From Macrostomum lignano (lineage: Eukaryota), in NCBI GenBank assembly GCA_002269645.1, contig NIVC01000158.1:620001-684000 (forward strand): a stretch of DNA of 64,000 nt, in the 5' to 3' direction. The notes under the pieces were generated by a model. That model searched no databases. It had not been told where the DNA came from and saw nothing but the letters and a program-made list of their open reading frames with translations. The translations under genes were made by a program, and so were the position numbers. Of this stretch, positions 15,223 to 41,100 are shown piece by piece. The number at the start of each line of letters is the position of its first letter. Positions within the stretch are counted from its first letter, which is position 1.

Positions 15223-16125
15223 ATGGATAACGGCCCGGTGAAGAAGGAGCCAGCTGAATTTTTGCTAACGGCTGCGGCAGCCGCCGCTGCTGCGGCTATG
15301 CGATCCGGCAGCCCACCAAGCAACGGACTGGCCTCAGGTCTAGCAGCAGGGCTACCGTGCTCATCATCATCAGTAACCGTCTCTTCGGCTCATATTAGTT
15401 CGCTGTTTCTGTCCAAAATTAGCGGCGTGCCTTGTCCGGCCACTCCAACTCGCTATACCGCGCCCGTTCACATCGACGTCGGCGGCGTGGCGTACACCTC
15501 CTCGCTGGAGACGCTGACCCGCTATCCTGAATCGCGGCTGGGGAAAATGTTCAACGGATCGGTACCGATAGTACTGGACACGCTAAAGCAGCACTATTTT
15601 ATCGACCGGGACGGGGAGTTGTTTCGCCATGTGCTTAATTACCTGCGCTCAGGACGGGTGACTACGCCACATGACTTCCAGGAGCTTGATCAGCTCATTG
15701 AAGAAGTGAAGTTCTACGAGCTGTCTGGGATGCTACGACAGTTGGAACAATTGCGACGAAGTGCAAGGCCGCAGCAGCAGTCGCAGCTGAACTGGCAACG
15801 GCAGCAGCGGGACTGCGAGTGTGTCACGCTGACCGTGCGACCGGAACTACAGGAGAGAATTCTGATCACCGGTCGGAAGCACCTGCTAGCCGAGCTGTTC
15901 CCGGATGTTACAGACTCCCTGATGGAGCCGCGCAACGCAAGTTGGAATCAGCTTGACTCGGATTACGTAATTCGATTTCCGCTGAACGGTTTCTGTCACC
16001 TCAACTCTGTTCAGGTGCTGCGACTGTTCCTGTCGCACGGTTTTACAGTGGCTGCATCGTCTGGAGGCTGCGCCCCGGACAGCCAACAGTTCACCGAGTA
16101 CCTGCTGTGCAAGTTGCTGGATTGA
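15223..16125 (+). CDS. KCTD15: KCTD1/KCTD15-like BTB/POZ protein, 300 aa, single coding exon
   Basis: BTB APVHIDVGG..YTSSLETLTRYPESRLGKMFNGSVPIVLDTLKQHYFIDRDG and C-terminal domain VIRFPLNGFCHLNSVQVL..QQFTEYLL, both characteristic of KCTD1/15. AATAAA follows near 16300. Confidence 0.92.
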   Translation: MDNGPVKKEPAEFLLTAAAAAAAAAMRSGSPPSNGLASGLAAGLPCSSSSVTVSSAHISSLFLSKISGVPCPATPTRYTAPVHIDVGGVAYTSSLETLTRYPESRLGKMFNGSVPIVLDTLKQHYFIDRDGELFRHVLNYLRSGRVTTPHDFQELDQLIEEVKFYELSGMLRQLEQLRRSARPQQQSQLNWQRQQRDCECVTLTVRPELQERILITGRKHLLAELFPDVTDSLMEPRNASWNQLDSDYVIRFPLNGFCHLNSVQVLRLFLSHGFTVAASSGGCAPDSQQFTEYLLCKLLD

Positions 16126-16987: not shown

Positions 16988-19920
16988 TCAGCCGAACATG
17001 TTGTACAGAAGGCGCGACCTGCTAGTAAAGTACGACCCAGCCAATTGGTCGGTTTCCCCACCAGCGTTGTCGCCAGTCCGTAGCGGAGCCGCATCCTGTG
17101 CATAGTCCTGCATGATGAGGCCAGTCGCGAACCAGAATCCTTCCGGAGGCTGGGCCGCTTCCAGAGTGATCCAGTTGATGCCCTAGACGGTGGTAGGGAC
17201 AGGGATAGTGCTTAGGACAGTGCCACAAATCAAGGTTGGCTGATTTGACCTCCGAGCACGCAGAATACGTACACAGACACACGCTCGCACAGGGTGTAAA
17301 GCGGTCGAATTTCTCGTCAACTGAAATGTGCTCTTTCTGTGCCTTGGGATTGGCCCTCGTTGGCGAAAGTTTCGCGAGCCCCAGTCCAATTTTTGTGCAC
17401 ATGGGTATCTTACCTTACCTGGGTGTACTTTAGCACGAAATTTAGCCGTGTTAATTGCTGAGCTACGACTGATTCTGCCCCCCCCCCCAGTTGCTGATTT
17501 GGTGGCTCTCTCAACTTCCATAGATTTGCAAAACTTGAATTCGCTCTCACCTCATCCCTTTTAATTAAATTTCCTGATCCCATACAAGAAACCATTTTAA
17601 ACCCGCTATTTATTCCAAAGTTTTATGAGCGAAAAAAATCCTACAGCAAAATAAACATGTCGCATCATCTGCTGATAATCGGAAAACTTGAACTGGTGGT
17701 GATCCGACTTGGCATTGATAGTCGCTGGCTTGCCTTGGTCCATACTGGATGCAGGCAACTGCGTTGGGTTCGCTGGCGGCGCTGTCGGTGGCTTTTTTTG
17801 GTTTTGCTCCTTTGCAGAGGATAAATTGCTAGCCGATTGATTGTGGCCAGCATCGAATACGCACCCCGTATGCTCAGATACAGACACAGAGCTGTTGCTG
17901 GCTGCTGTAAAAAGGCCTTGCCATAGAGTGCTGCTACTGCTGCTTTGCGGCTTCTTGTCGGTGCTGGTATTCGTCTCTACCCGGGATTCCTCATCGCTCA
18001 AGTCGACCCATTGTTGTTGCGCGGACATCGTTGGTGATGACTCAGGTGGCAAAGGCTTCGATTTTTGATCGAATGATGAATTCTTCGTGGAAGGGAAAAC
18101 TTTCGGCGTTGCATTCAGCGATTCAATAGAAGTCTGACGCTTCGAACGATGTACTTTAGGGAGTTCTGGCACTGATGCTGAACGTGACACCAGTTTTGGT
18201 TCAGCATTTTTATTCTGAGACGGCTCCAACGCAGCATCGGATGAAGACTTTCCCAGAACTGATTTGTACGACACTCCCATGCAATTTAAGTTGGAAAGTT
18301 TCACCGACTGGGACGGCTCGGAGAGTAGTTGAGACCCTTGGCTTTGCAACTCTTTTTGGCGCTGCATATTTTGGTGCTTTTTCTTGCTGGTCAAATCGAT
18401 CACGATGCTGGGGTTGCTGGAGTCGCTCTTAGTTCCCGTCGTTTCCGTGTTTTGTGGGGTGCTGGAGGTGCACAGAGATATATGCGATTGTCGCATTGGC
18501 CAATCGATATCTTCGTCGAAATCCTCGTCAATGTCATCGTAGGCATCGTCTGAATACTGTAACTGACTTGGGCCTGTCGAAGAACCCAGCGCACTCTGTT
18601 TCTGCGGAGGAAAATGACTGATCTGTTATCATCTCAAAAAACAGTTCATGGACTACTAAAAGAGCGTGCAGAAATTTACGCTCGCATAATTAATAGCAAC
18701 TTTTAAAGCTTCCTCTACCTTTGGAATACGACTCCATGAGTAGCGAAGATCAGCTTCAATCCATGTGCACTGAAGAGTATCCAGGATGCGGCGCATCGAA
18801 TCCTTATTAATAACTTTGCCTTTGATGTGACGAACTAGCGAACCGAAGTCGTTGCAATTGCATAGCTTCGGTTCCATGCACTCAGCTGTTAGTCGGCACT
18901 TAGGACAAACTCCACTGAAGACGTCTCTGCGTCTATCATCCAGGGATGTAGAGCGCATATGGGAGACACTAAAGTGTCGCAAATTGTCGCAGTGTAAAAC
19001 GCCTAATAAAGCTGCGTACCGCAATACATCAAGCTGGTACGACATTTCGCCAATGGTTTCGAACAGCAACGTGTCTAGATCAGTAACCTGCGGCCTGCCG
19101 TAGTGATCCAACGCTATGCTTGTTAGCGACAGATTTCCGTGATATATTCTCCTGTGGTGCAAAAATTCCAAGGCCAGCAGGATGCAGGCAGCGTAGTAGC
19201 GAACTGTGCTGTGCGTGAGATGCACCATTAACTTCTTGAGATCGCTTAAGTACATGTTACTGGGCAGCGGCGTAATGACCAGCAGATCGTGGCGGTATAC
19301 CTTAGCTGCTAAAACTTTCTGCACAAACGGCGTCAACGAGGCCAAGTCTCTCTGAGCTTTGATAATCCGTTTAAAGTTCTCCAATATTGTTTTGATCTCC
19401 TCTTCTTGCCAGTCGCGTAATGATCGACTAGTGCACATGTACCGGACGCAGTGGCTGTCGCAGCGGATGTGTCTTTGATTTGGAATAAGATAAGGCAGAC
19501 GTTCAGTAAAATACTAAAGCATTATGAATATGGTAGGCTCGTTAACAAGATAGAATAATTTTTCCCTAGTATACACTGTGCTATTTCAATGGATCAGATG
19601 TTTAGGTGTTGAGTTGGTTGGAACAGAATGCCAACTTACCTGCTTCCATTTTGCACGCAGCGCCTTTGGTCGAGCCAGAAATCTCGAGTCAAGTGGCTGA
19701 GATCGAAATCACCGTCGAATAGAATTATTTGGCTTTCTTTGGGGGCACTCTGACCGGCGTTCGCTTCTTCCTCTTTGGGGACATCAGCGTTTGCTTTCAA
19801 GTCGTTGGCTTTATTGCCTTTCTTTGCTCCTGTCTTCTTTTTTTGTACATTTTTCTTCGAGTCGGTCGTGTTTTCACCAGGCGTGTTTTCACGGTGATAT
19901 GATAATGAAGTTGTTTGCAT
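16988..19920 (-). CDS. AGC-derived pseudokinase, about 741 aa. Exons 19920-19640, 19472-18680, 18601-17645, 17182-16988.
   Basis: Kinase-fold segment TVRYYAACILLALEFLHHRRIYHGNLSLTSIAL..QVTDLD (HRD to HGN, DFG to DLD). The exon 3/4 junction reads MMRHVYFA-GINWITLEAAQPP, like the AGC tail HPFFxGIDWxxL..PP. All four exons join with GT-AG in phase. The links of exons 3 and 4 are inferred. Confidence 0.72.
17270..17400 (-). mobile_element. SINE-like family 2 fragment (intronic)
   Basis: Shares the ..ACACCCTGTGCGAGCGTG 3' end and central motifs with the other copies. Confidence 0.5.
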
Positions 19921-20254
19921 CTCTCTTGCTTATAATTTATGGTGTCTCATTGACAGAGTGAAAGTAAAAAGTCAAAGTTAAGACGGTAGCAACACGATCA
20001 GCCAATACTTGGTTGACATAACGAGCTTTAAGGATTTGTCCATAGACAATGCAGGCATTCGCCTAACGTAGGTAAGTAGTAGAATTTTTAGTTCGTTCAT
20101 TTCACCAATAGCTGAATAAAATTGTTTCGCCCTTGTGTGTGCCTTTCGGCTTTGTGCCACAATTTCAGCTTTGGTGGCTATGCAAGCCACTATTTGAGTT
20201 GGCTATATTCCAATGTAGTTCGAAAGGCAGTTAATCATATAAAAAATCTGTCCC

Positions 20255-23200
20255 ATGTCAATGACTCGGAAGGGCCTGCGCGCCTCTGAGGACTGCAATC
20301 CCATGTCGCTGAGCATCGAGGAAAAGAGCTGCAGTTCTCCAAGTCTAGTCTCAGCCGAGTCAGCCGCTGATCGTTTTGGTTGTCCGGTGGTTCGAATCCG
20401 ACTCTGGCCGACGCCTCAAGCGAGGCATAACTGCCTTCACGAGACTCTGGATTGGAACAAGATCGACTGTCCAGACTTTCTACGCATCGCCAGGGAGGTC
20501 TCAGTGGAAGATCTTTTCGAGTGCATCGTCACGGACAAGATGTATTCCAAAACTGGCGAGCGGCCCTGGGATCTGTCCGAGTTTGTGCTGCAGCGAAAGG
20601 ACAGGAGGCTGTTTATCGGGGGTGAGACTCTTTGTTTACAACTGTTGAGAGGTTGTTCTTGAGCAACCTTGAAGAACAGATTAACCCATATCCTGACACC
20701 TGCGCTGTACAAGCAACTGCTATCATTAAAATCAAATTAAACTATACAATAGCGAATAGGCGGGTCAAATGGGATCATAAGTATACATGTAGAAGGAAGT
20801 AAAAAGTAGCAACGCAACAGAGTATAAATCTTGCTAACTCGTCCATTCAGGTCAAGGCGTTGTGATGTTCGTCCGCCGCCAAGGTCACTCCACCAGCCTG
20901 GCAATGAAGGTGTGCTATCACAGACGAGAAGAGAAAAAAGTGGAGCGTCACGTGCAGCGAACCATTTTACACTTGAAAGGCCAGTCAGCCAGTCAGTTTG
21001 TTGGCACAATTCTCGTCAACTACCTCACTCGACGGTTTTTTATTACCATCATGCCGAAAGCGAAGTTTGCCTCGCTAAAGGTAAGGAATAAAAAAAACAT
21101 TGATTTGGAACTTGTGCGCGTTGGTCAGGGGCTGTGCGATCCAAATCCTCATGAGGCACACAGAGTGTACATGCCTGAGGATTAGAAAGTCAGGGCCGCT
21201 GTGCATCCTGGGTGCATGAGTGCGCGCCTGCGTACAGTATTGGCGAAATGGGCAGAACTGCCGTCAGCGCTGGTTGTGGGACCATGTCGCCGAAGGCATT
21301 GCGCCAGGCTGCCCGCAGCCCTCCTGAGATTATTATTATTATTATTAAATATTATTAATATTATTAATATTATTATTATTACATATTATCATCAATTTAA
21401 GAGTCAGAGGTTTTAGGTTATTGTGAATTAAACTTATTGAGTTGCTTCCGGCCCACTGGTGTTTGTAGCCTAGTGGTTAGAGCGTCGGACTCACGACCTG
21501 AAGGACGGGGGTTCGATTCCTGATCCCACTTGGAAAAAAAATTGTGTCCTTGAGCAAGACAATTCATTCTGCATTGCTTCAGCTCACCCAGCTGTAAAAT
21601 GGGTGCCAGCATTAGTTGGGGCAATTGAGGCTGTGTGTGGCGACCCCCAATCCTTGCACTGAACAGCCGTACGCAGCCTTCAGATGCGCCGCGCAATAGC
21701 TGCGGCTGAGCTGTCGGTTGCTCATCTGCCCGAGTGTAGGTGTAATAAATGATTATTACCAGCTGACTATCACATAAATCATAATTGTTCTTCTCCACTC
21801 TCTCTGAAGACTCTAAAGCAGGAACTCGGCACCCTGCCGGAGTCCAGCATCCGCTATTACTTCGCGTGCATCACATCGGCCTTGGTGAAGCTGCACAGTA
21901 TTCAAATTTGTCACCGCGACATCAAGTGCGACAATGTTCTAATTATGCATAATGGCACTCCGGCCCTCATTGACTTCGGCTTGGCCGTGAAAGCGCCCGC
22001 CACAATGGCAGAGTACAAGCCCAATGCGAGGGTGACTCAGATGCAGTACTATCCACCCGAGACCAGACAGATGGGGAACTTTGTCAACGATTATAAGTGA
22101 GTCATTTTAAGATGCGGTTTTAGTGGGCCTTTTTACTCCTTTCTAACTGAAACAGAATTTGTAAGAGATGCTGCTCACCACCTTCCTGATCCAATGCAGA
22201 ATCTAATTGAGATGCTGCTCACCGCCTCCCTCATCCGATGCAGAATCTAATTGAGATGCTGCTCACCACCTCCCTCATCCGATGCAGAATCTAATTGAGA
22301 TGCTGCTCACCATCTCCCTGATCCAATGCAGAATCTAATTGAGATGCTGCTCACCGCCTCCCTCATCCGATGCAGAATCTAATTGAGATGCTGCTCACCA
22401 CCTCCCTCATCCGATGCAGAATCTAATTGAGATGCTGCTCACCATCTCCCTCATCCGATGCAGAATCTAATTGAGATACTGCTCACCACCTCCCTCATCT
22501 GATGCAGAATCTAATTGAGATGCTGCTCACCACCTCCCTCATCCGATGCAGAATCTAATTGAGATGCTGCTCACCATCTCCCTCATCCGATGCAGAATTT
22601 AATTGAGATACTGCTCACCGCCTCCCTCATCTGATGCAGAATCTAATTGAGATGCTGCTCAATTACCCCCTCATCCGATGCAGAATCTAATTGAGATGCT
22701 GCTCACCGCCTCCCTTATCCGATGCAGAATCTAATTGAGATGCTGCTCACCGCCTCCCTCATCCGATGCAGAATCTAATTGAGATGCTGCTCAATTACCC
22801 CCTCATCCGATGCAGAATCTAATTGAGATGCTGCTCACTTACCCCTCATCTAATAGTCAGTTAGTTCTGACCGCAACCTGCTGGTAGACAAAAAATTTAT
22901 GCCCAAACTTATTGAATCCAAAACAGTGCACCGTGTGTGCAGCTTCCATCATCAGGCATGTACACACTGTTTGAGCGCTAGCCCCCATCGGCGTGAGCTT
23001 GAGCCTGAGAGCCCAACTTGTTACCCTTGAGCTACCCTGCCTCCCCACACTGCTCAATGCAGAATCGACAGCTGGCTGCTGGGGTTCTTCATGTGCGAGA
23101 TGCTATTAAGCGACCGGGAGCACCTGTGGGCGAAGTTCCGCGGTTCCAACCAGTCCAACTGGATATTCGCCACCTGCCCGGCCTGCCGAATGCCCAACAT

Positions 23201-23408
23201 TGCCAATGTGCACCCGGTGCTCAACCAGCTGCTCATCAGAGATCCGAAAGCTCGCTGCTACGTGGCAGACATTGTGCAGCAGGACTACCTTAAAGAGGGC
23301 GATTTTTTTGACTCAATTGAGCAGGCAGAGCCGCCACCACTGCAGACCGGAACCATCAACACGTCAACATCGTTAGCTCAGACTGAGAGAAACGCCTCCG
23401 AGGCCTAA
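20255..23408 (+). CDS. Divergent Ser/Thr protein kinase (AGC/CAMK-like), about 409 aa. Exons 20255-20621, 20851-21080, 21810-22096, 23063-23408.
   Basis: The spliced product has IGGQGVV (G-loop), LAMK, CHRDIKCDNVL, IDFGLA, YYPPE, KIDSWLLG and LLIRDPKAR. All junctions GT-AG in phase. The exon 3 acceptor could also be 21822. Confidence 0.88.
21125..21235 (+). mobile_element. SINE-like family 2 fragment (kinase intron 2)
   Basis: GGCACACAGAGTGTACATGCCTGAGGATTAGAAAGTCAGGGCCGCTGTGCATCC matches the reverse complement of 34551-34603. Confidence 0.65.
21458..21750 (+). mobile_element. tRNA-derived SINE, family 1
   Basis: A-box TAGCCTAGTGGTTAG, B-box GGTTCGATTCC, conserved body GTGTCCTTGAGCAAGAC..CCCAGCTGTAAAATGGGTGCCAGC, tail GGTGTAAT; homologous to 31651-31910 and 34712-34960. 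Confidence 0.88.
22164..22852. repeat. 44-bp minisatellite in kinase intron 3
   Basis: About 15 copies of GAGATGCTGCTCACCACCTCCCTCATCCGATGCAGAATCTAATT. Confidence 0.96.
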
Positions 23409-24375: not shown

Positions 24376-29525
<5,150 letters not shown>

Positions 29526-38100: not shown

Positions 38101-41100
38101 GCTGGCGCCCCTTGGTGCTGGCGCCCCTTGGTGCTGGCGCCCCTTGGTGCTGGCGCCCCTTGGTGCTGGCGCCCCTTGGTGCTAAAGCCCCTTGGTGCTA
38201 AAGCCCCTTGGTGCTGGCGCCCCTTGGTGCTGGCGCCCCTTGGTGCTGGCGCCCCTTGGTGCTGGCGCCCCTGAAACTTTGAATTTCTTTAAAAGAATCT
38301 CTAGTTAATCTATGCCTGTTATTTCTTGAGAAAAGCATTCGCATCAGTAGCGAGATCTGCTATCTCGTTAACCTGACTAGCAGTAGTAAGGCCACTTCAC
38401 GCTCGCTATAAGAGCCTACCGAACCCATTTAGAAGTTACGCAACGCTCAGTTCAATTCAGATATGAGTAGACAGACCACTCTAGAATCTAACCTTATCTC
38501 CTTCGACTGCAGTCATGGCTTCGACCAGACTTAATGGTCCAGTAATCACTTACTCTGCGCCCGCACACACCCTTTCCAATACGCCTTCCGGAGTCGCAAC
38601 CCCGCTTGTTAATGACGAAGGAAAGGGTAATGAATGCTTCATGGTTGCCACTGCATTTTCCTTGATCTAAGCTACCTGAGAGTGGATTATACAGCAGCTT
38701 TATTCAGACTTAAGTATCCATATTTTAAGACCCGTTTTATACCAACAGGTCAGGTGTTAAGCTGACAAGCCAGCTAGCTATTTGCATTTTCGCCATTTCC
38801 CGGAGCAGCTTTAGAATGAGTCAGCAGCAGTGAATGAGTTCCCCCTGTGCGTGACTGCAAAGCTCAGCTGACTGTGTGAGGAGAGAAAAGGGGAGAAAAC
38901 AAACAGCACCTCGAATCAAATTTCGTTTGCCAATAAAACCTCTACTCCCAACCAACTTTGGTTTCCTTCCCATGTTGGATCCACTAAATATCCTCTGGGG
39001 AAGGAAGGTTAAAAACTTTTCTGTGCCAGCTCCAACAGCTAAAAATCATAGAAGGTGATCCAATCTATCTGATCCAATCTATCTGATCCAATCTATCTGA
39101 TCCAATCTATCTGATCCAATCTATCTGATCCAATCTATCTGATCCAATCTATCTGATCCAATCTATCTGATCCAATCTATCTGATCCAATCTATCTGATC
39201 CAATCTATCTGATCCAATCTATCTGATCCAATCTATCTGATCCAATCTATCTGATCCAATCTATCTGATCCAATCTATCTGATCCAATCTATCTGATCCA
39301 ATCTATCTGATCCAATCTATCTGATCCAATCTATCTGATCCAATCTATCTGATCCAATCTATCTGATCCAATCTATCTGATCCAATCTATCTGATATAAT
39401 CTATCTGATCCAATCTATCTGATCCAATCTATCTGATCCAATCTATCTGATATAATCTATCTGATCCAATCTATCTGATATAATATATCTGATCCAATCT
39501 ATCTGATCCAATCTATCTGATCCAATCTATCTGATCCAATCCATCTGATCCAATCTATCTGATCCAATCTATCTGATCCAATCTATCTGATCCAATCTAT
39601 CTGATCCAATCTATCTGATCCAATCTATCTGATCCAATCTATCTGATCCAATCTATCTGATCCAATCTATCTGATCCAATCTATCTGATCCAATCTATCT
39701 GATCCAATCTATCTGATATAATCTATCTGATCCAATCTATCTGATATAATCTATCTGATCCAATCTATCTGATCCAATCTATCTGATCCAATCTATCTGA
39801 TCCAATCTATCTGATCCAATCTATCTGATCCAATCTATCTGATCCAATCTATCTGATCCAATCTATCTGATCCAATCTATCTGATCCAATCTATCTGATC
39901 CAATCTATCTGATCCAATCTATCTGATCCAATCTATCTGATCCAATCTATCTGATATAATCTATCTGATCCAATCTATCTGATATAATCTATCTGATCCA
40001 ATCTATCTGATCCAATCTATCTGATCCAATCTATCTGATCCAATCTATCTGATCCAATCTATCTGATCCAATCCATCTGATCCAATCTATCTGATCCAAT
40101 CTATCTGATCCAATCTATCTGATCCAATCTATCTGATCCAATCTATCTGATCCAATCTATCTGATCCAATCTATCTGATCCAATCTATCTGATCCAATCT
40201 ATCTGATCCAATCTATCTGATCCAATAAAGCAGGGGTGGGCAAGCTCGGAGAGAGACGAGGAGAGATGAGAGGAGAGAAAAGAGAGAAGAGGGGAGAGAG
40301 AGGAGAGAACTTAGAAGAGAGCTGAGAAGAGGCACAAACCTGCAATAAAGCATTAAGCAGGTGTCAATTCATTAGCATTGCTTACCTGATGCCTTTGACT
40401 GCTTCATAGCCTCACATTACTTTTGCTAAAAATACTGTTTAGTATGGGAAACTTGTCACGGCTCCTAAAGTGAAAGCGCTCGGGCCAGAGTTGGAGGGGA
40501 GACACTGCGAAGAAAGTTTTAGCATTTTTCTACCCTTTTTTTAAAAAGAAGCATTCGATATGCGAGCTCGTATGCAAGCATTGCTCGAGAAATGTTTGCA
40601 ACACAGACAGACAGAACAGCCGTGTTATTACGGTATTGGTTTATTTTAAGCATATAAAATATAAAATATCGCTTATCTCATTTCTTCCGTGTGAGGACTT
40701 CGGCGATAATGCCTTTGTTTCTTTTCTACAAGACCGAATACCAGAAACTCATCTGCACCCCCCTCAAGGATCTCATCCGCCCCGAAAAGGATTTCATCCG
40801 CCCCGAAAAGGATCTCATCCGCCCCGAAAAGGATTTCATCCGCCCCGAAAAGGATCTCATCCGCCCCGAAAAGGATTTCATCCGCCCCGAAAAGGATTTC
40901 ATCCGCCCCGAAAAGGATTTCATCCGCCCCGAAAAGGATCTCATCCGCCCCGAAAAGGATTTCATCCGCCCCAAAAAAAGGATTTCATCCGCCCCGAAAA
41001 GGATCTCATCCGCCCCGAAAAGGATCTCATCCGCCCCGAAAAGGATCTCATCCGCCCCAAAAAAAGGATTTCATCCGCCCCGAAAAGGATCTCATCCGCC

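What the first reader, a model, noticed from the sequence alone, without database searches (positions are those of the whole stretch)
16988..23408. Head-to-head kinase/pseudokinase paralog pair sharing a CPxCR motif
The start codons are 334 bp apart (19920 minus, 20255 plus), with three CCAAT boxes between them (20002, 20105, 20210), suggesting a bidirectional promoter. The proteins share features: FDLSHL/WDLSEF before the kinase fold, VRYYAACI/IRYYFACI, SYQLD/DYKID, and an unusual C-lobe CPKCR/CPACR. An inverted duplication in which one copy lost catalysis would give a co-expressed kinase plus pseudokinase module. The two CxxC motifs might bind a shared metal ion or form a redox switch (inference).
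Basis: partly seen in the sequence, partly recalled or inferred. Interest (0 to 1): 0.74.

Follow-up and report, generated by a model that had tools for sequence, protein, structure and literature searches.

The report
Flatworm kinase and pseudokinase gene neighbours
Two back-to-back genes of the flatworm Macrostomum lignano encode an apparently active protein kinase and a catalytically dead kinase look-alike; the pair is real, but nothing here shows that they are duplicates of each other or work together, so it is a modest curiosity.

Summary
The window is Macrostomum lignano DNA. A 728-aa gene on the minus strand (16988-19920, BOX15_Mlig006990) and a 409-aa gene on the plus strand (20255-23408, BOX15_Mlig019684) lie head to head, with 334 bp between their start codons. 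The plus protein keeps every catalytic motif of a Ser/Thr kinase. The minus protein has lost the Gly loop, the beta3 Lys, HRD-Asp/Lys/Asn and about 20 residues of activation segment. Its kinase-like domain is still under purifying selection (dN/dS about 0.13), so it is a maintained pseudokinase.

The "inverted duplicate paralogs" reading is not supported. Only about 90 central residues align (30-32% identity). A profile of the pseudokinase, searched against 1.84 billion proteins, ranks at least 17 unrelated kinases above its neighbour. The N- and C-lobes show no similarity once Cys is masked. Introns do not coincide. The pseudokinase's own paralog sits elsewhere with no partner kinase nearby. 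Three of the four "shared motifs" are generic AGC-kinase signatures.

The CxxC is real, conserved within each family and 31-32 residues after the alphaF glycine in both proteins. In the pseudokinase it belongs to a conserved five-Cys cluster. Structure prediction failed (pLDDT about 30). The three CCAAT boxes are a mild excess. Both families appear restricted to Macrostomum.

The parts
16988..19920 (-). Pseudokinase gene (BOX15_Mlig006990g1, 728 aa). Exons: 19920-19640, 19472-18719, 18601-17645, 17182-16988. An alternative donor at 17657 gives the 724-aa UniRef model.
   Evidence: Spliced translation is identical to P0030/PAA50768.1. Called as a 728-aa gene in both assembly copies.
18719..19740 (-). 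Degenerate kinase-like domain (about aa 61-345). It has HGNLSLTS in place of HRDxKxxN and DLD in place of DFG. It lacks the Gly loop and the beta3 Lys, and the activation segment is about 20 residues short.
   Evidence: Pfam Pkinase 18-20 bits, below the cut-off. Best PDB matches are AGC kinases at 22 bits or less. Alignment A2. dN 0.20 / dS 1.5 against paralog P0004.
18871..18924 (-). It lies in the presumed alphaG-alphaH loop.
   Evidence: All five Cys are invariant between P0003 and P0004, which are 68% identical over the domain. Cys positions. Window coordinates were derived from the exon 2 frame by arithmetic.
17646..18601 (-). Ser-rich, low-complexity linker of about 310 aa (aa 346 to about 655). 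It starts with an acidic patch, DDAYDDIDEDFDEDID.
   Evidence: Long open frame. Poorly conserved between the paralogs. No secondary structure in the AF2 model, which is of low confidence.
16988..17182 (-). Conserved C-terminal module (aa about 650-728; the motif starts at the end of exon 3): H.YF...NW..LE.AQPPEG.WFA ... GSYFTSRSR.LY..FG. Its start resembles the alphaI/tail junction of AGC kinases.
   Evidence: 51% identity between paralogs, with long invariant runs. A mini-HMM of the AGC tail junction hits aa 658-672 (9.3 bits) and the homologous place in P0004 (8.4 bits); the best of 2000 shuffles scored 5.1. Pfam and PDB searches found nothing.
19921..20254 (.). Shared 334-bp 5' intergenic region with CCAAT at 20002, 20105 and 20210 (+ strand, 103 and 105 bp apart). 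Candidate divergent promoter.
   Evidence: Identical in the second assembly copy L003. No similarity to the ortholog's 5' UTR.
20255..23408 (+). Active-looking Ser/Thr kinase gene (BOX15_Mlig019684g1, 409 aa). Exons: 20255-20621, 20851-21080, 21810-22096, 23063-23408.
   Evidence: 100% identical to P0001. Junctions confirmed by ortholog cDNA L004. Pfam Pkinase 93.8 bits. Best PDB matches are PKG, Aurora A and MSK1 at about 61 bits.
23174..23188 (+). CPACR (aa 333-337) in the alphaG-alphaH loop of the plus kinase.
   Evidence: Aligns to MSK1 'KSEPPYP', PAK4 'NLPPRL' and PKA 'SGKVRFP'. CxxC is kept as CSECH in ortholog P0002, but the P and R are not.
22165..22838 (.). 44-bp minisatellite, 15.3 copies, inside intron 3 of the plus gene. 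Not functional in the finding.
   Evidence: Its copy number differs between the two assembly copies.

Best explanation
This is a genuine divergent gene pair in Macrostomum lignano. Both genes are lineage-restricted members of the eukaryotic protein kinase superfamily with AGC-like cores.

The plus gene encodes a 409-aa enzyme with a complete catalytic apparatus. It has a conserved N-terminal extension of about 60 aa and no AGC hydrophobic-motif tail. I infer that it is an active Ser/Thr kinase.

The minus gene encodes a 728-aa protein. Its kinase-like domain has lost the catalytic residues and most of the activation segment, yet it evolves under strong purifying selection. I infer that it is a non-catalytic scaffold or regulator. 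Its conserved five-Cys cluster (CxxC-x5-C-x5-CxC), inserted in the alphaG-alphaH loop, most likely forms a small structural zinc site or a thiol-sensitive docking surface. The core is followed by a disordered Ser-rich linker and a conserved C-terminal module that begins like an AGC tail.

The 334 bp between the start codons leave little room for two independent promoters, so some shared regulation is likely. This is an inference.

The two proteins are demonstrably homologous only at the level of the kinase superfamily and its AGC-like core. A common origin by an old local duplication is possible, and the aligned CxxC is the only specific hint for it, but it is not shown. A dedicated kinase-pseudokinase partnership is a hypothesis, not a result.
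For: - Gene models match the NCBI proteins exactly.
- cDNA of an ortholog confirms the splicing of the plus gene.
- The catalytic motifs are complete in the plus protein and lost in the minus protein.
- The best solved relatives of both are AGC or AGC-like kinases: PKG, MSK1 and Aurora for plus; PKC-theta, GRK2, PKN and STK32A for minus.
- Purifying selection: minus domain versus its paralog, dN 0.20 and dS about 1.5; plus versus its ortholog, dN 0.15 and dS about 2. All four exon differences between the two assembly copies are synonymous.
- The Cys cluster is invariant between the paralogs.
- Both families are restricted. The minus family was found only in M. lignano among 1.84 billion representatives. 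The plus family has only P0001, P0002 and one weak hit.
- The same head-to-head layout occurs in both assembly copies.
- The C-terminal module carries an AGC-junction-like motif.
Against: - There is no expression, TSS or interaction data. About 30% of M. lignano genes are SL trans-spliced and many lie in operons (PMC8629364), so the spacing of start codons does not locate promoters.
- Zinc binding is inferred from the Cys pattern only, and both AlphaFold models were unusable (pLDDT 32 and 30).
- Assigning the minus CxxC to the alphaG-alphaH loop rests on its distance from alphaF and on a MAFFT alignment that is driven by the cysteines themselves.
- The pseudokinase's C-lobe has no PDB match at all.
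- 'Inactive' is a prediction from sequence, and some pseudokinases retain unusual activities.
Confidence: 0.55

Rival explanations
1. An inverted local duplication of one AGC-like kinase gene produced the pair. One copy lost catalysis. The two are co-expressed from a bidirectional promoter and act as a kinase plus pseudokinase module, in which the two CxxC motifs share a metal ion or form a redox switch.
For: - The genes are adjacent and head to head, 334 bp apart.
- Both are orphans with AGC-like cores.
- The plus kinase scores 32-33 bits against the minus profile, against 22 bits or less for every solved kinase and 15 bits for PKA. It therefore lies in the extreme upper tail of all kinases.
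- Each protein has a single CxxC (CP.CR), 31 and 32 residues after the alphaF Gly, conserved as CxxC in relatives.
- Both have RYY rather than the usual RFY in alphaE.
- Each has one intron in the Gly-loop region.
- Three CCAAT boxes against 0.53 expected.
Against: - The neighbour is not the best or near-best hit: at least 17 unrelated kinases from fungi, protists and environmental samples score higher.
- Plus-to-minus similarity equals plus-to-PKA similarity.
- Only 92 columns align.
- The N-lobes and the Cys-masked C-lobes show no similarity.
- The Gly-loop introns differ in phase (1 versus 2) and lie 2-9 codons apart, depending on the alignment. The other plus introns have no counterpart.
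- The minus-type paralog lives without a plus-type neighbour, and no second plus-type gene was found.
- The P and R of CP.CR are not conserved in the plus ortholog.
- The minus protein has five Cys of its own, enough for a private metal site.
Confidence: 0.2
2. Chance neighbours. Two unrelated, fast-evolving AGC-like genes happen to sit head to head, as roughly a quarter of adjacent gene pairs do. They have no functional link, and the CxxC coincidence is convergence or chance.
For: - No specific sequence relationship was detected beyond the generic kinase core.
- The minus paralog sits at an unrelated locus.
- Each protein is expected to hold about 0.3-0.5 CxxC by composition (3-4% Cys in the domains).
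- The CCAAT excess is weak.
Against: - Two orphan kinase-fold genes being neighbours is itself unusual.
- The CxxC offset matches to within one residue, with P and R also matching in this species.
- The short 334-bp spacer makes independent regulation hard.
Confidence: 0.22
3. The minus gene is a decaying pseudogene or an annotation artefact rather than a functional pseudokinase.
For: Loss of nearly all catalytic motifs, a Pfam score below the cut-off, and a low-complexity middle region.
Against: - The 728-codon frame is open across four exons with canonical splice sites.
- dN/dS is about 0.13 over 250 codons against a 68%-identical paralog.
- The Cys cluster and the C-terminal module are conserved.
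- The proteins are identical in the two assembly copies.
Confidence: 0.03

Closest known systems
AGC-group Ser/Thr kinases (PKG, MSK1 N-terminal domain, PKC-theta, PKN, GRK2, STK32A) and Aurora A
   Same: These are the best solved matches of both proteins. Both have an alphaE motif of the xR(F/Y)YxA(C/E)I type, and both domains start with a D(F/L)-type motif. The minus C-terminal module begins like the AGC alphaI/tail junction.
   Different: Identity is only about 25-30%, with scores of 61 bits (plus) and 22 bits (minus). Neither has a Pfam Pkinase_C match or an FxxF[ST][FY] hydrophobic motif. The plus protein ends about 37 aa after the core. In the minus protein, about 310 aa of low-complexity sequence lie between the core and the tail-like motif. 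No orthologs were found outside Macrostomum.
Kinase-pseudokinase regulatory pairs (LKB1-STRAD, RAF-KSR, HER2-HER3, JAK JH1-JH2, Toxoplasma ROP18-ROP5); from general knowledge
   Same: An active kinase together with a catalytically degraded relative that is kept by selection.
   Different: In the known pairs the partnership is shown biochemically, and the partners are clear paralogs or lie in one polypeptide. Here, neither interaction nor close paralogy is shown, and the only link is genomic adjacency.
Src C-lobe cysteine cluster (Cys483/487/496/498)
   Same: A cluster of four cysteines in the C-terminal lobe of a kinase whose modification changes activity (thiol reagents, Hg2+, S-nitrosylation of Cys498; PMC3835079). 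From memory, the Src sequence there reads CPPECPESLHDLMCQC, in the alphaG-alphaH region. That gives the pattern C-P-x-x-C ... C-x-C, like the minus protein's CPKC ... CNC.
   Different: Src is an active tyrosine kinase, and its last two Cys lie in helix alphaH. The spacings differ (CxxxC-x8-CxC versus CxxC-x5-C-x5-CxC). No homology was tested or is claimed. The position of the cluster in Src was recalled from memory and not checked with a tool.
Mycobacterial PknG rubredoxin module and the Rad50 / Lck-CD4 inter-chain zinc sites (general knowledge)
   Same: CxxC pairs that bind a metal and regulate a kinase (PknG), or bridge two polypeptides with two Cys from each (Rad50 hook, Lck-CD4 clasp).
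   Different: Those modules lie outside the kinase C-lobe. Nothing here shows metal binding or contact between the two proteins.
Vertebrate bidirectional promoters with NF-Y/CCAAT boxes (general knowledge)
   Same: Head-to-head genes less than 1 kb apart, with several CCAAT boxes in the spacer.
   Different: TSSs are unmapped. The CCAAT excess is weak (2.3% of control windows reach it). There is no conservation test. Flatworm promoter architecture and SL trans-splicing (PMC8629364) complicate the analogy.

Membership tests
Eukaryotic protein kinase, catalytically competent (plus gene) | Pfam Pkinase above the gathering score, and all key residues present: Gly loop, beta3 Lys, HRD, catalytic-loop Lys/Asn, DFG, APE, alphaF Asp, alphaH-I Arg. 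| tested here: met
   Pkinase 93.8 bits against a 31.7 cut-off. G123-Q-G125 (the third Gly is Met), K142, H234-R-D236, K238, N241, D254-F-G, P-P-E283, D297, R359. Enzymatic activity itself was not tested.
AGC kinase group (both genes) | Core most similar to AGC kinases, including the alphaE R(F/Y)YxAE/C motif. | tested here: met
   Top PDB hits are PKG and MSK1 (plus) and PKC-theta, GRK2, PKN and STK32A (minus). The scores are low: 61 and 22 bits.
AGC kinase group (both genes) | C-terminal AGC tail with a turn motif and the hydrophobic motif FxxF[ST][FY] (Pfam Pkinase_C). | tested here: not met
   No Pkinase_C hit for either protein or for the minus C-terminal module. No FxxF[ST][FY] was seen. 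Only a tail-junction-like HxYFxxxNWxxLE is present in the minus protein. I therefore call them AGC-like and do not file them as AGC members.
Pseudokinase (minus gene) | Recognisable kinase-fold homology. | tested here: met
   hhalign probability 96.7% against the plus family over 92 columns. Pfam Pkinase E = 4.5e-4 to 2e-3, but below the gathering score. AGC kinases in the PDB match at E about 1e-3. The C-lobe alone has no PDB match.
Pseudokinase (minus gene) | Loss of residues needed for phosphotransfer. | tested here: met
   HRD Asp is N207. The catalytic-loop Lys and Asn are S209 and S212. DFG is DLD (DFD in the paralog). There is no GxGxxG, no beta3 Lys (VRYMC) and no APE, and the activation segment is about 20 residues short.
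Pseudokinase (minus gene) | Maintained by selection and actually devoid of activity. | tested here: inconclusive
   Selection is met: dN/dS about 0.13. Lack of activity or of nucleotide binding cannot be tested with these tools.
Paralog pair from a local inverted duplication | Each is the other's closest relative (reciprocal best similarity, or sister position in a tree). | tested here: not met
   The plus protein is absent from the 23 hits of the minus profile in 1.84 billion proteins. It scores 31.9-33.3 bits, against 35-47 bits for 17 unrelated kinases. From the plus protein, minus scores 31.8 and PKA 30.3 bits. No full kinome tree could be built.
Paralog pair from a local inverted duplication | Similarity along the whole domain, and shared intron positions. 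| tested here: not met
   Only beta4 to DFG aligns. N-lobe z = -0.8 and Cys-masked C-lobe z = -0.3. The plus introns are at codon 123 (phase 1), after codon 199 (phase 0) and in codon 295 (phase 2). The only intron inside the minus domain is in codon 94 (phase 2), which is 2-9 codons from the first plus intron depending on the alignment.
Bidirectional-promoter gene pair | Head-to-head genes less than 1 kb apart. | tested here: met
   334 bp between the start codons, in both assembly copies.
Bidirectional-promoter gene pair | Divergent TSSs within the spacer, and correlated expression. | not testable with these tools
   No CAGE or RNA-seq data were available. Gene identifiers were not found in the searchable literature. 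SL trans-splicing is common in this species (PMC8629364).
Zinc- or redox-active Cys site | Four conserved ligands in spatial proximity. | tested here: inconclusive
   The minus protein has five invariant Cys within 18 residues. The plus protein has only the two CxxC Cys conserved in that loop. The geometry is unknown because both AF2 models failed.

The most novel reading that the evidence does not exclude
The pair is a dedicated, co-expressed regulatory module confined to Macrostomum. In this reading, an AGC-like kinase that has lost its own hydrophobic-motif tail is controlled in trans by the neighbouring pseudokinase. Control would work through the pseudokinase's Cys-cluster loop (an inter-chain or redox-sensitive metal site shared with the kinase's CxxC), through its displaced AGC-tail-like C-terminal module docking on the kinase N-lobe, or both. 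This would resemble the way TPX2 or a substrate's hydrophobic motif activates Aurora A or PDK1.
Probability: 0.1. Interest if true: 0.6.

Novelty: new member of a known kind. Interest (0 to 1): 0.3.

Why it matters
If the two proteins do work together, this would be a compact example of a kinase and its pseudokinase regulator that can be studied genetically. They sit next to each other, M. lignano allows RNAi and transgenesis, and the cysteine cluster in the alphaG-alphaH loop is unusual. On present evidence the value is mainly in annotation. Two 'hypothetical proteins' can now be described as an AGC-like orphan kinase and a selected-for orphan pseudokinase family with a conserved Cys cluster and a conserved C-terminal module. 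The analysis also shows that three of the four motifs that suggested paralogy are generic AGC signatures.

Tried and rejected
1. AlphaFold2 on the plus protein (3-sequence alignment) and on the full minus protein (3 sequences) gave pLDDT 32.4 and 30.5. The models were unusable, so no fold search and no Cys geometry were possible.
2. The minus C-terminal module found nothing in Pfam or the PDB. Only a home-made AGC-junction mini-HMM gave a signal. That test is post hoc.
3. The minus C-lobe alone had no PDB hit at E<=10.
4. I compared the two assembly copies (L002 and L003) to look for constrained non-coding sequence. They are about 99% identical and the spacer is 100% identical, so the comparison is uninformative.
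5. I compared the spacer with the 5' UTR of the ortholog cDNA and found no similarity.
6. I looked for CCAAT boxes upstream of the minus paralog. There are none within 560 bp.
7. I looked for a plus-type kinase, KCTD or NCKX near the paralog. None was found; the upstream region holds tandem-repeat ORFs and an NHL-like ORF.
8. A literature search for Mlig019684, Mlig006990 and Mlig007152 gave no papers.
9. A profile search with the plus family added only one weak hit, P0026 at 44 bits.
10. I rejected the pseudogene reading for the minus gene (dN/dS 0.13).
11. I rejected the idea that ARAGORN-detectable tRNA genes lie in the plus introns. The tRNA-like stretch is a degenerate repeat.


Full report
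**What the window is.** The plus-strand protein is 100% identical over 409 aa to NCBI 'hypothetical protein BOX15_Mlig019684g1 [Macrostomum lignano]'. The minus-strand protein is identical to PAA50768.1 / BOX15_Mlig006990g1, 728 aa. The window is part of contig NIVC01000158.1 of assembly GCA_002269645.1; L002 equals window coordinates minus 10254. This is therefore eukaryotic DNA with introns, from a free-living flatworm, and it is rich in repeats.

**Gene models.**
- The plus gene has four exons: 20255-20621, 20851-21080, 21810-22096 and 23063-23408. A 1550-nt intronless contig from RNA-seq run SRR30276812 encodes a 64%-identical ortholog, P0002. It aligns exon by exon to exactly these segments.
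- The minus gene has four exons: 19920-19640, 19472-18719, 18601-17645 and 17182-16988. A UniRef model of 724 aa uses a donor 12 nt further upstream.

**Kinase and pseudokinase.**
- The plus protein scores 93.8 bits on Pfam Pkinase. It has the beta3 Lys (K142), HRDIKCDN (234-241), DFG (254-256), PPE (281-283), the alphaF Asp (D297) and the alphaH-I Arg (R359).
- Its best solved relatives are PKG, Aurora A and the MSK1 N-terminal domain, at about 61 bits. That makes it a distant, AGC-like kinase.
- It has no AGC tail: there is no Pkinase_C hit and the protein ends 37 residues after the core.
- The minus protein reaches only 18-20 bits on Pkinase, below the cut-off. It reads YHGNLSLTS where HRDxKxxN should be, and DLD (DFD in its paralog) for DFG. 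It lacks a Gly loop, a beta3 Lys and an APE. Only 23 residues separate DLD from the alphaF glycine, against 45 in the plus protein.
- Its best solved matches are PKC-theta, GRK2, PKN1/2 and STK32A, at 22 bits or less over about 50 residues. It is therefore an AGC-like pseudokinase by sequence.

**The pseudokinase is not decaying.** Over 250 codons against its 68%-identical paralog P0004 (Mlig007152g1), dN = 0.20 and dS is about 1.5, giving omega of about 0.13. The plus kinase against its ortholog gives dN 0.15 and dS about 2. The four exon differences between the two assembly copies are all synonymous, since the encoded proteins are identical.

- BLASTP and hhalign align only the central 88-92 residues (beta4 to DFG) at 30-32% identity. 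This is the most conserved part of any protein kinase.
- I spent the one exhaustive search on a profile of the pseudokinase domain, run against 1.84 billion representative proteins. Only 23 proteins reached E<=1e-3. Six belong to its own M. lignano family. The other 17 are unrelated kinases or fragments at 35-47 bits. They include a Mycena protein and environmental or protist-like sequences.
- The neighbour is not among those hits. Rescored locally on the same scale, it gets 31.9 bits, its ortholog 33.3 and PKA 14.9.
- The plus kinase therefore sits in the extreme upper tail of all kinases, and above every kinase with a solved structure. But it falls within the same noise band as many unrelated AGC-like proteins.
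- In the reverse direction, the plus kinase matches the pseudokinase (31.8 bits) no better than PKA (30.3 bits).
- Semi-global alignments of the N-lobes (z = -0.8) and of the C-lobes with Cys masked (z = -0.3) are no better than shuffles.
- The plus gene has introns in codon 123 (phase 1), after codon 199 (phase 0) and in codon 295 (phase 2). The pseudokinase domain has one, in codon 94 (phase 2). That lies 2-9 codons from the first plus intron, depending on the alignment, and is in a different phase.
- The pseudokinase's own paralog lies on another contig. It has no plus-type kinase within 10 kb and neither KCTD nor NCKX as a neighbour. No second plus-type gene was found in the species.
- An ancient local duplication followed by extreme divergence of one copy cannot be excluded, but nothing measured here requires it.

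**The shared motifs.** The PKG and PKC-theta alignments printed by the tools show the same alphaE motif: TRFYTACV and ATFYAAEI. xRYYxACI is therefore an AGC signature, not a private one. FDLSHL/WDLSEF corresponds to the usual 'l.dF..l' start of AGC domains and sits in N-lobes that do not otherwise align. SYQLD/DYKID is the generic Y...D of subdomain IX.

**The CxxC is the one non-generic feature.**
- Each protein has exactly one CxxC. C333 lies 31 residues after the alphaF glycine G302 in the plus protein. C283 lies 32 residues after G251 in the minus protein.
- In the plus protein it maps to the alphaG-alphaH loop of MSK1, PAK4 and PKA.
- It is conserved as CPKCR in the minus paralog and as CSECH in the plus ortholog. 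The two Cys are therefore constrained, but the P and R are not.
- The positional match has perhaps a few per cent probability by chance, given one CxxC in each protein. It is the best hint of a specific relationship. However, the MAFFT and Needleman-Wunsch alignments that superpose the two motifs are driven by the cysteines themselves.
- In the pseudokinase the CxxC opens a five-Cys cluster, C283, C286, C292, C298 and C300, all invariant between the paralogs. The cluster sits on a 13-residue insertion relative to the plus protein. That is enough for a private zinc site, which weakens the idea of a metal shared between the two proteins.
- A known precedent for a functional C-lobe Cys cluster is Src Cys483/487/496/498 (PMC3835079). 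Its position in the fold is from my memory.

**The spacer.** Three CCAAT boxes occur in 334 bp, against 0.53 expected. Of equal-sized control windows, 2.3% do as well. The window-wide count is inflated by a 14-bp satellite at 39056-40226 that carries CCAAT in every unit. The spacer is identical in the second assembly copy, which is uninformative. It shows no similarity to the ortholog's 5' UTR. The paralog has no CCAAT within 560 bp upstream. About 30% of M. lignano genes are SL trans-spliced and many are in operons (PMC8629364), so the distance between start codons does not by itself define promoters. A shared divergent promoter is plausible because of the short distance, but it is untested.

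**Other anatomy of the pseudokinase.** After the core come an acidic patch, about 310 aa of Ser-rich low-complexity sequence, and a C-terminal module of about 75 aa that is 51% identical between the paralogs. The module starts with HVYFAGINWITLEAAQPPEG. This resembles the HxFFxxxxWxxLxxxxxxPPFxP junction between helix alphaI and the AGC tail.
- Pfam and the PDB gave nothing for it.
- A mini-HMM built from six natural AGC junctions hits this spot in both paralogs (9.3 and 8.4 bits). The best of 2000 shuffles scored 5.1.
- This is a post-hoc test and is recorded as a lead.

**Limits.**
- Both AlphaFold2 runs failed because only three homologous sequences could be supplied (pLDDT 32 and 30). No structural test of the CxxC positions or of a heterodimer was possible.
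- No expression data or gene-specific literature could be found.

**Verdict.**
- The kinase/pseudokinase contrast is confirmed and strengthened by the selection analysis.
- The inverted-duplication paralogy is not supported by reciprocal similarity, whole-domain alignability, intron positions or the paralogous locus.
- The bidirectional promoter and the CxxC metal/redox ideas remain untested hypotheses.
- Both genes are Macrostomum-restricted members of a well-known superfamily, so interest is modest.

Noticed in passing
window 16988-17182 and 17646-17690 (minus strand); P0030 aa 650-728; P0004 aa 606-684: The pseudokinase has a conserved C-terminal module. Its start (H.YF...NW..LE.AQPPEG) resembles the alphaI/tail junction of AGC kinases, but it lies about 310 aa downstream of the kinase-like core. 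It ends in an invariant GSYFTSRSR.LY..FG of unknown nature.
   Followed up: partly
window 17645 versus 17657 (minus strand): Two donor sites are used for the last intron of the minus gene in public models. One gives 728 aa (NCBI) and the other 724 aa (UniRef). The 728-aa form matches the paralog better (HVYFAGINW versus HNYFINTNW).
   Followed up: partly
window 22165-22838: A 44-bp minisatellite of 15.3 copies lies in intron 3 of the plus gene. The second assembly copy (L003) has a gene span 166 bp shorter, consistent with a difference in copy number.
   Followed up: partly
window about 21418-21800 (intron 2 of the plus gene): A tRNA-like, SINE-type repeat; ARAGORN calls no tRNA here. Its translation (…QPTAQPQLLRGASE.CVRL…) also appears inside the chimeric UniRef protein P0006. 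This shows that the repeat is dispersed and contaminates gene predictions. An (ATT)n microsatellite lies at 21329-21381.
   Followed up: no
window 15223-16125 (+): A single-exon KCTD1/15-like gene (BTB_2 plus KCTD1-15_CTD, E = 1.7e-35). It is convergent with the 3' end of the pseudokinase gene, about 860 bp away.
   Followed up: no
window 24376-29525 (-): A Na+/Ca2+ exchanger (Na_Ca_ex, 555-aa product) lies downstream of the plus kinase and is convergent with it. Its introns hold long (TAAC)n and (TCTA)n arrays at 25275-26074 and 28202-29305.
   Followed up: no
window 39056-40226: A 14-bp satellite (TGATCCAATCTATC, 84 copies) carries CCAAT in each unit. It accounts for most of the apparent window-wide excess of CCAAT. 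The window as a whole contains more than 25 large tandem arrays.
   Followed up: partly
window 20238-20245 (+) and about 19925-19945 (minus strand): TATA-like A/T-rich elements (TATAAAAA; ATAAATTATAA) lie only about 10-15 bp upstream of both annotated start codons. If they are real TATA boxes, transcription would start inside the annotated coding regions and the true start codons would be further downstream. The N-termini are not conserved in the relatives.
   Followed up: no
L001 5600-8460 (+), upstream of paralog P0004: A long tandem repeat is translated as (QDIAEQ.RILQSRAGYCRA)n, followed by an NHL-repeat-like ORF on the same strand as the pseudokinase paralog. Public model P0006 fuses these with the pseudokinase, probably as an artefact.
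   Followed up: no
P0004 aa 78-81; P0030 aa 88-107: The N-lobe of the pseudokinase family, where the Gly loop should be, is also Cys-rich. The paralog has CVRC. The window protein has C88, C98, C102 and C107, of which C98 and C107 are conserved.
   Followed up: no
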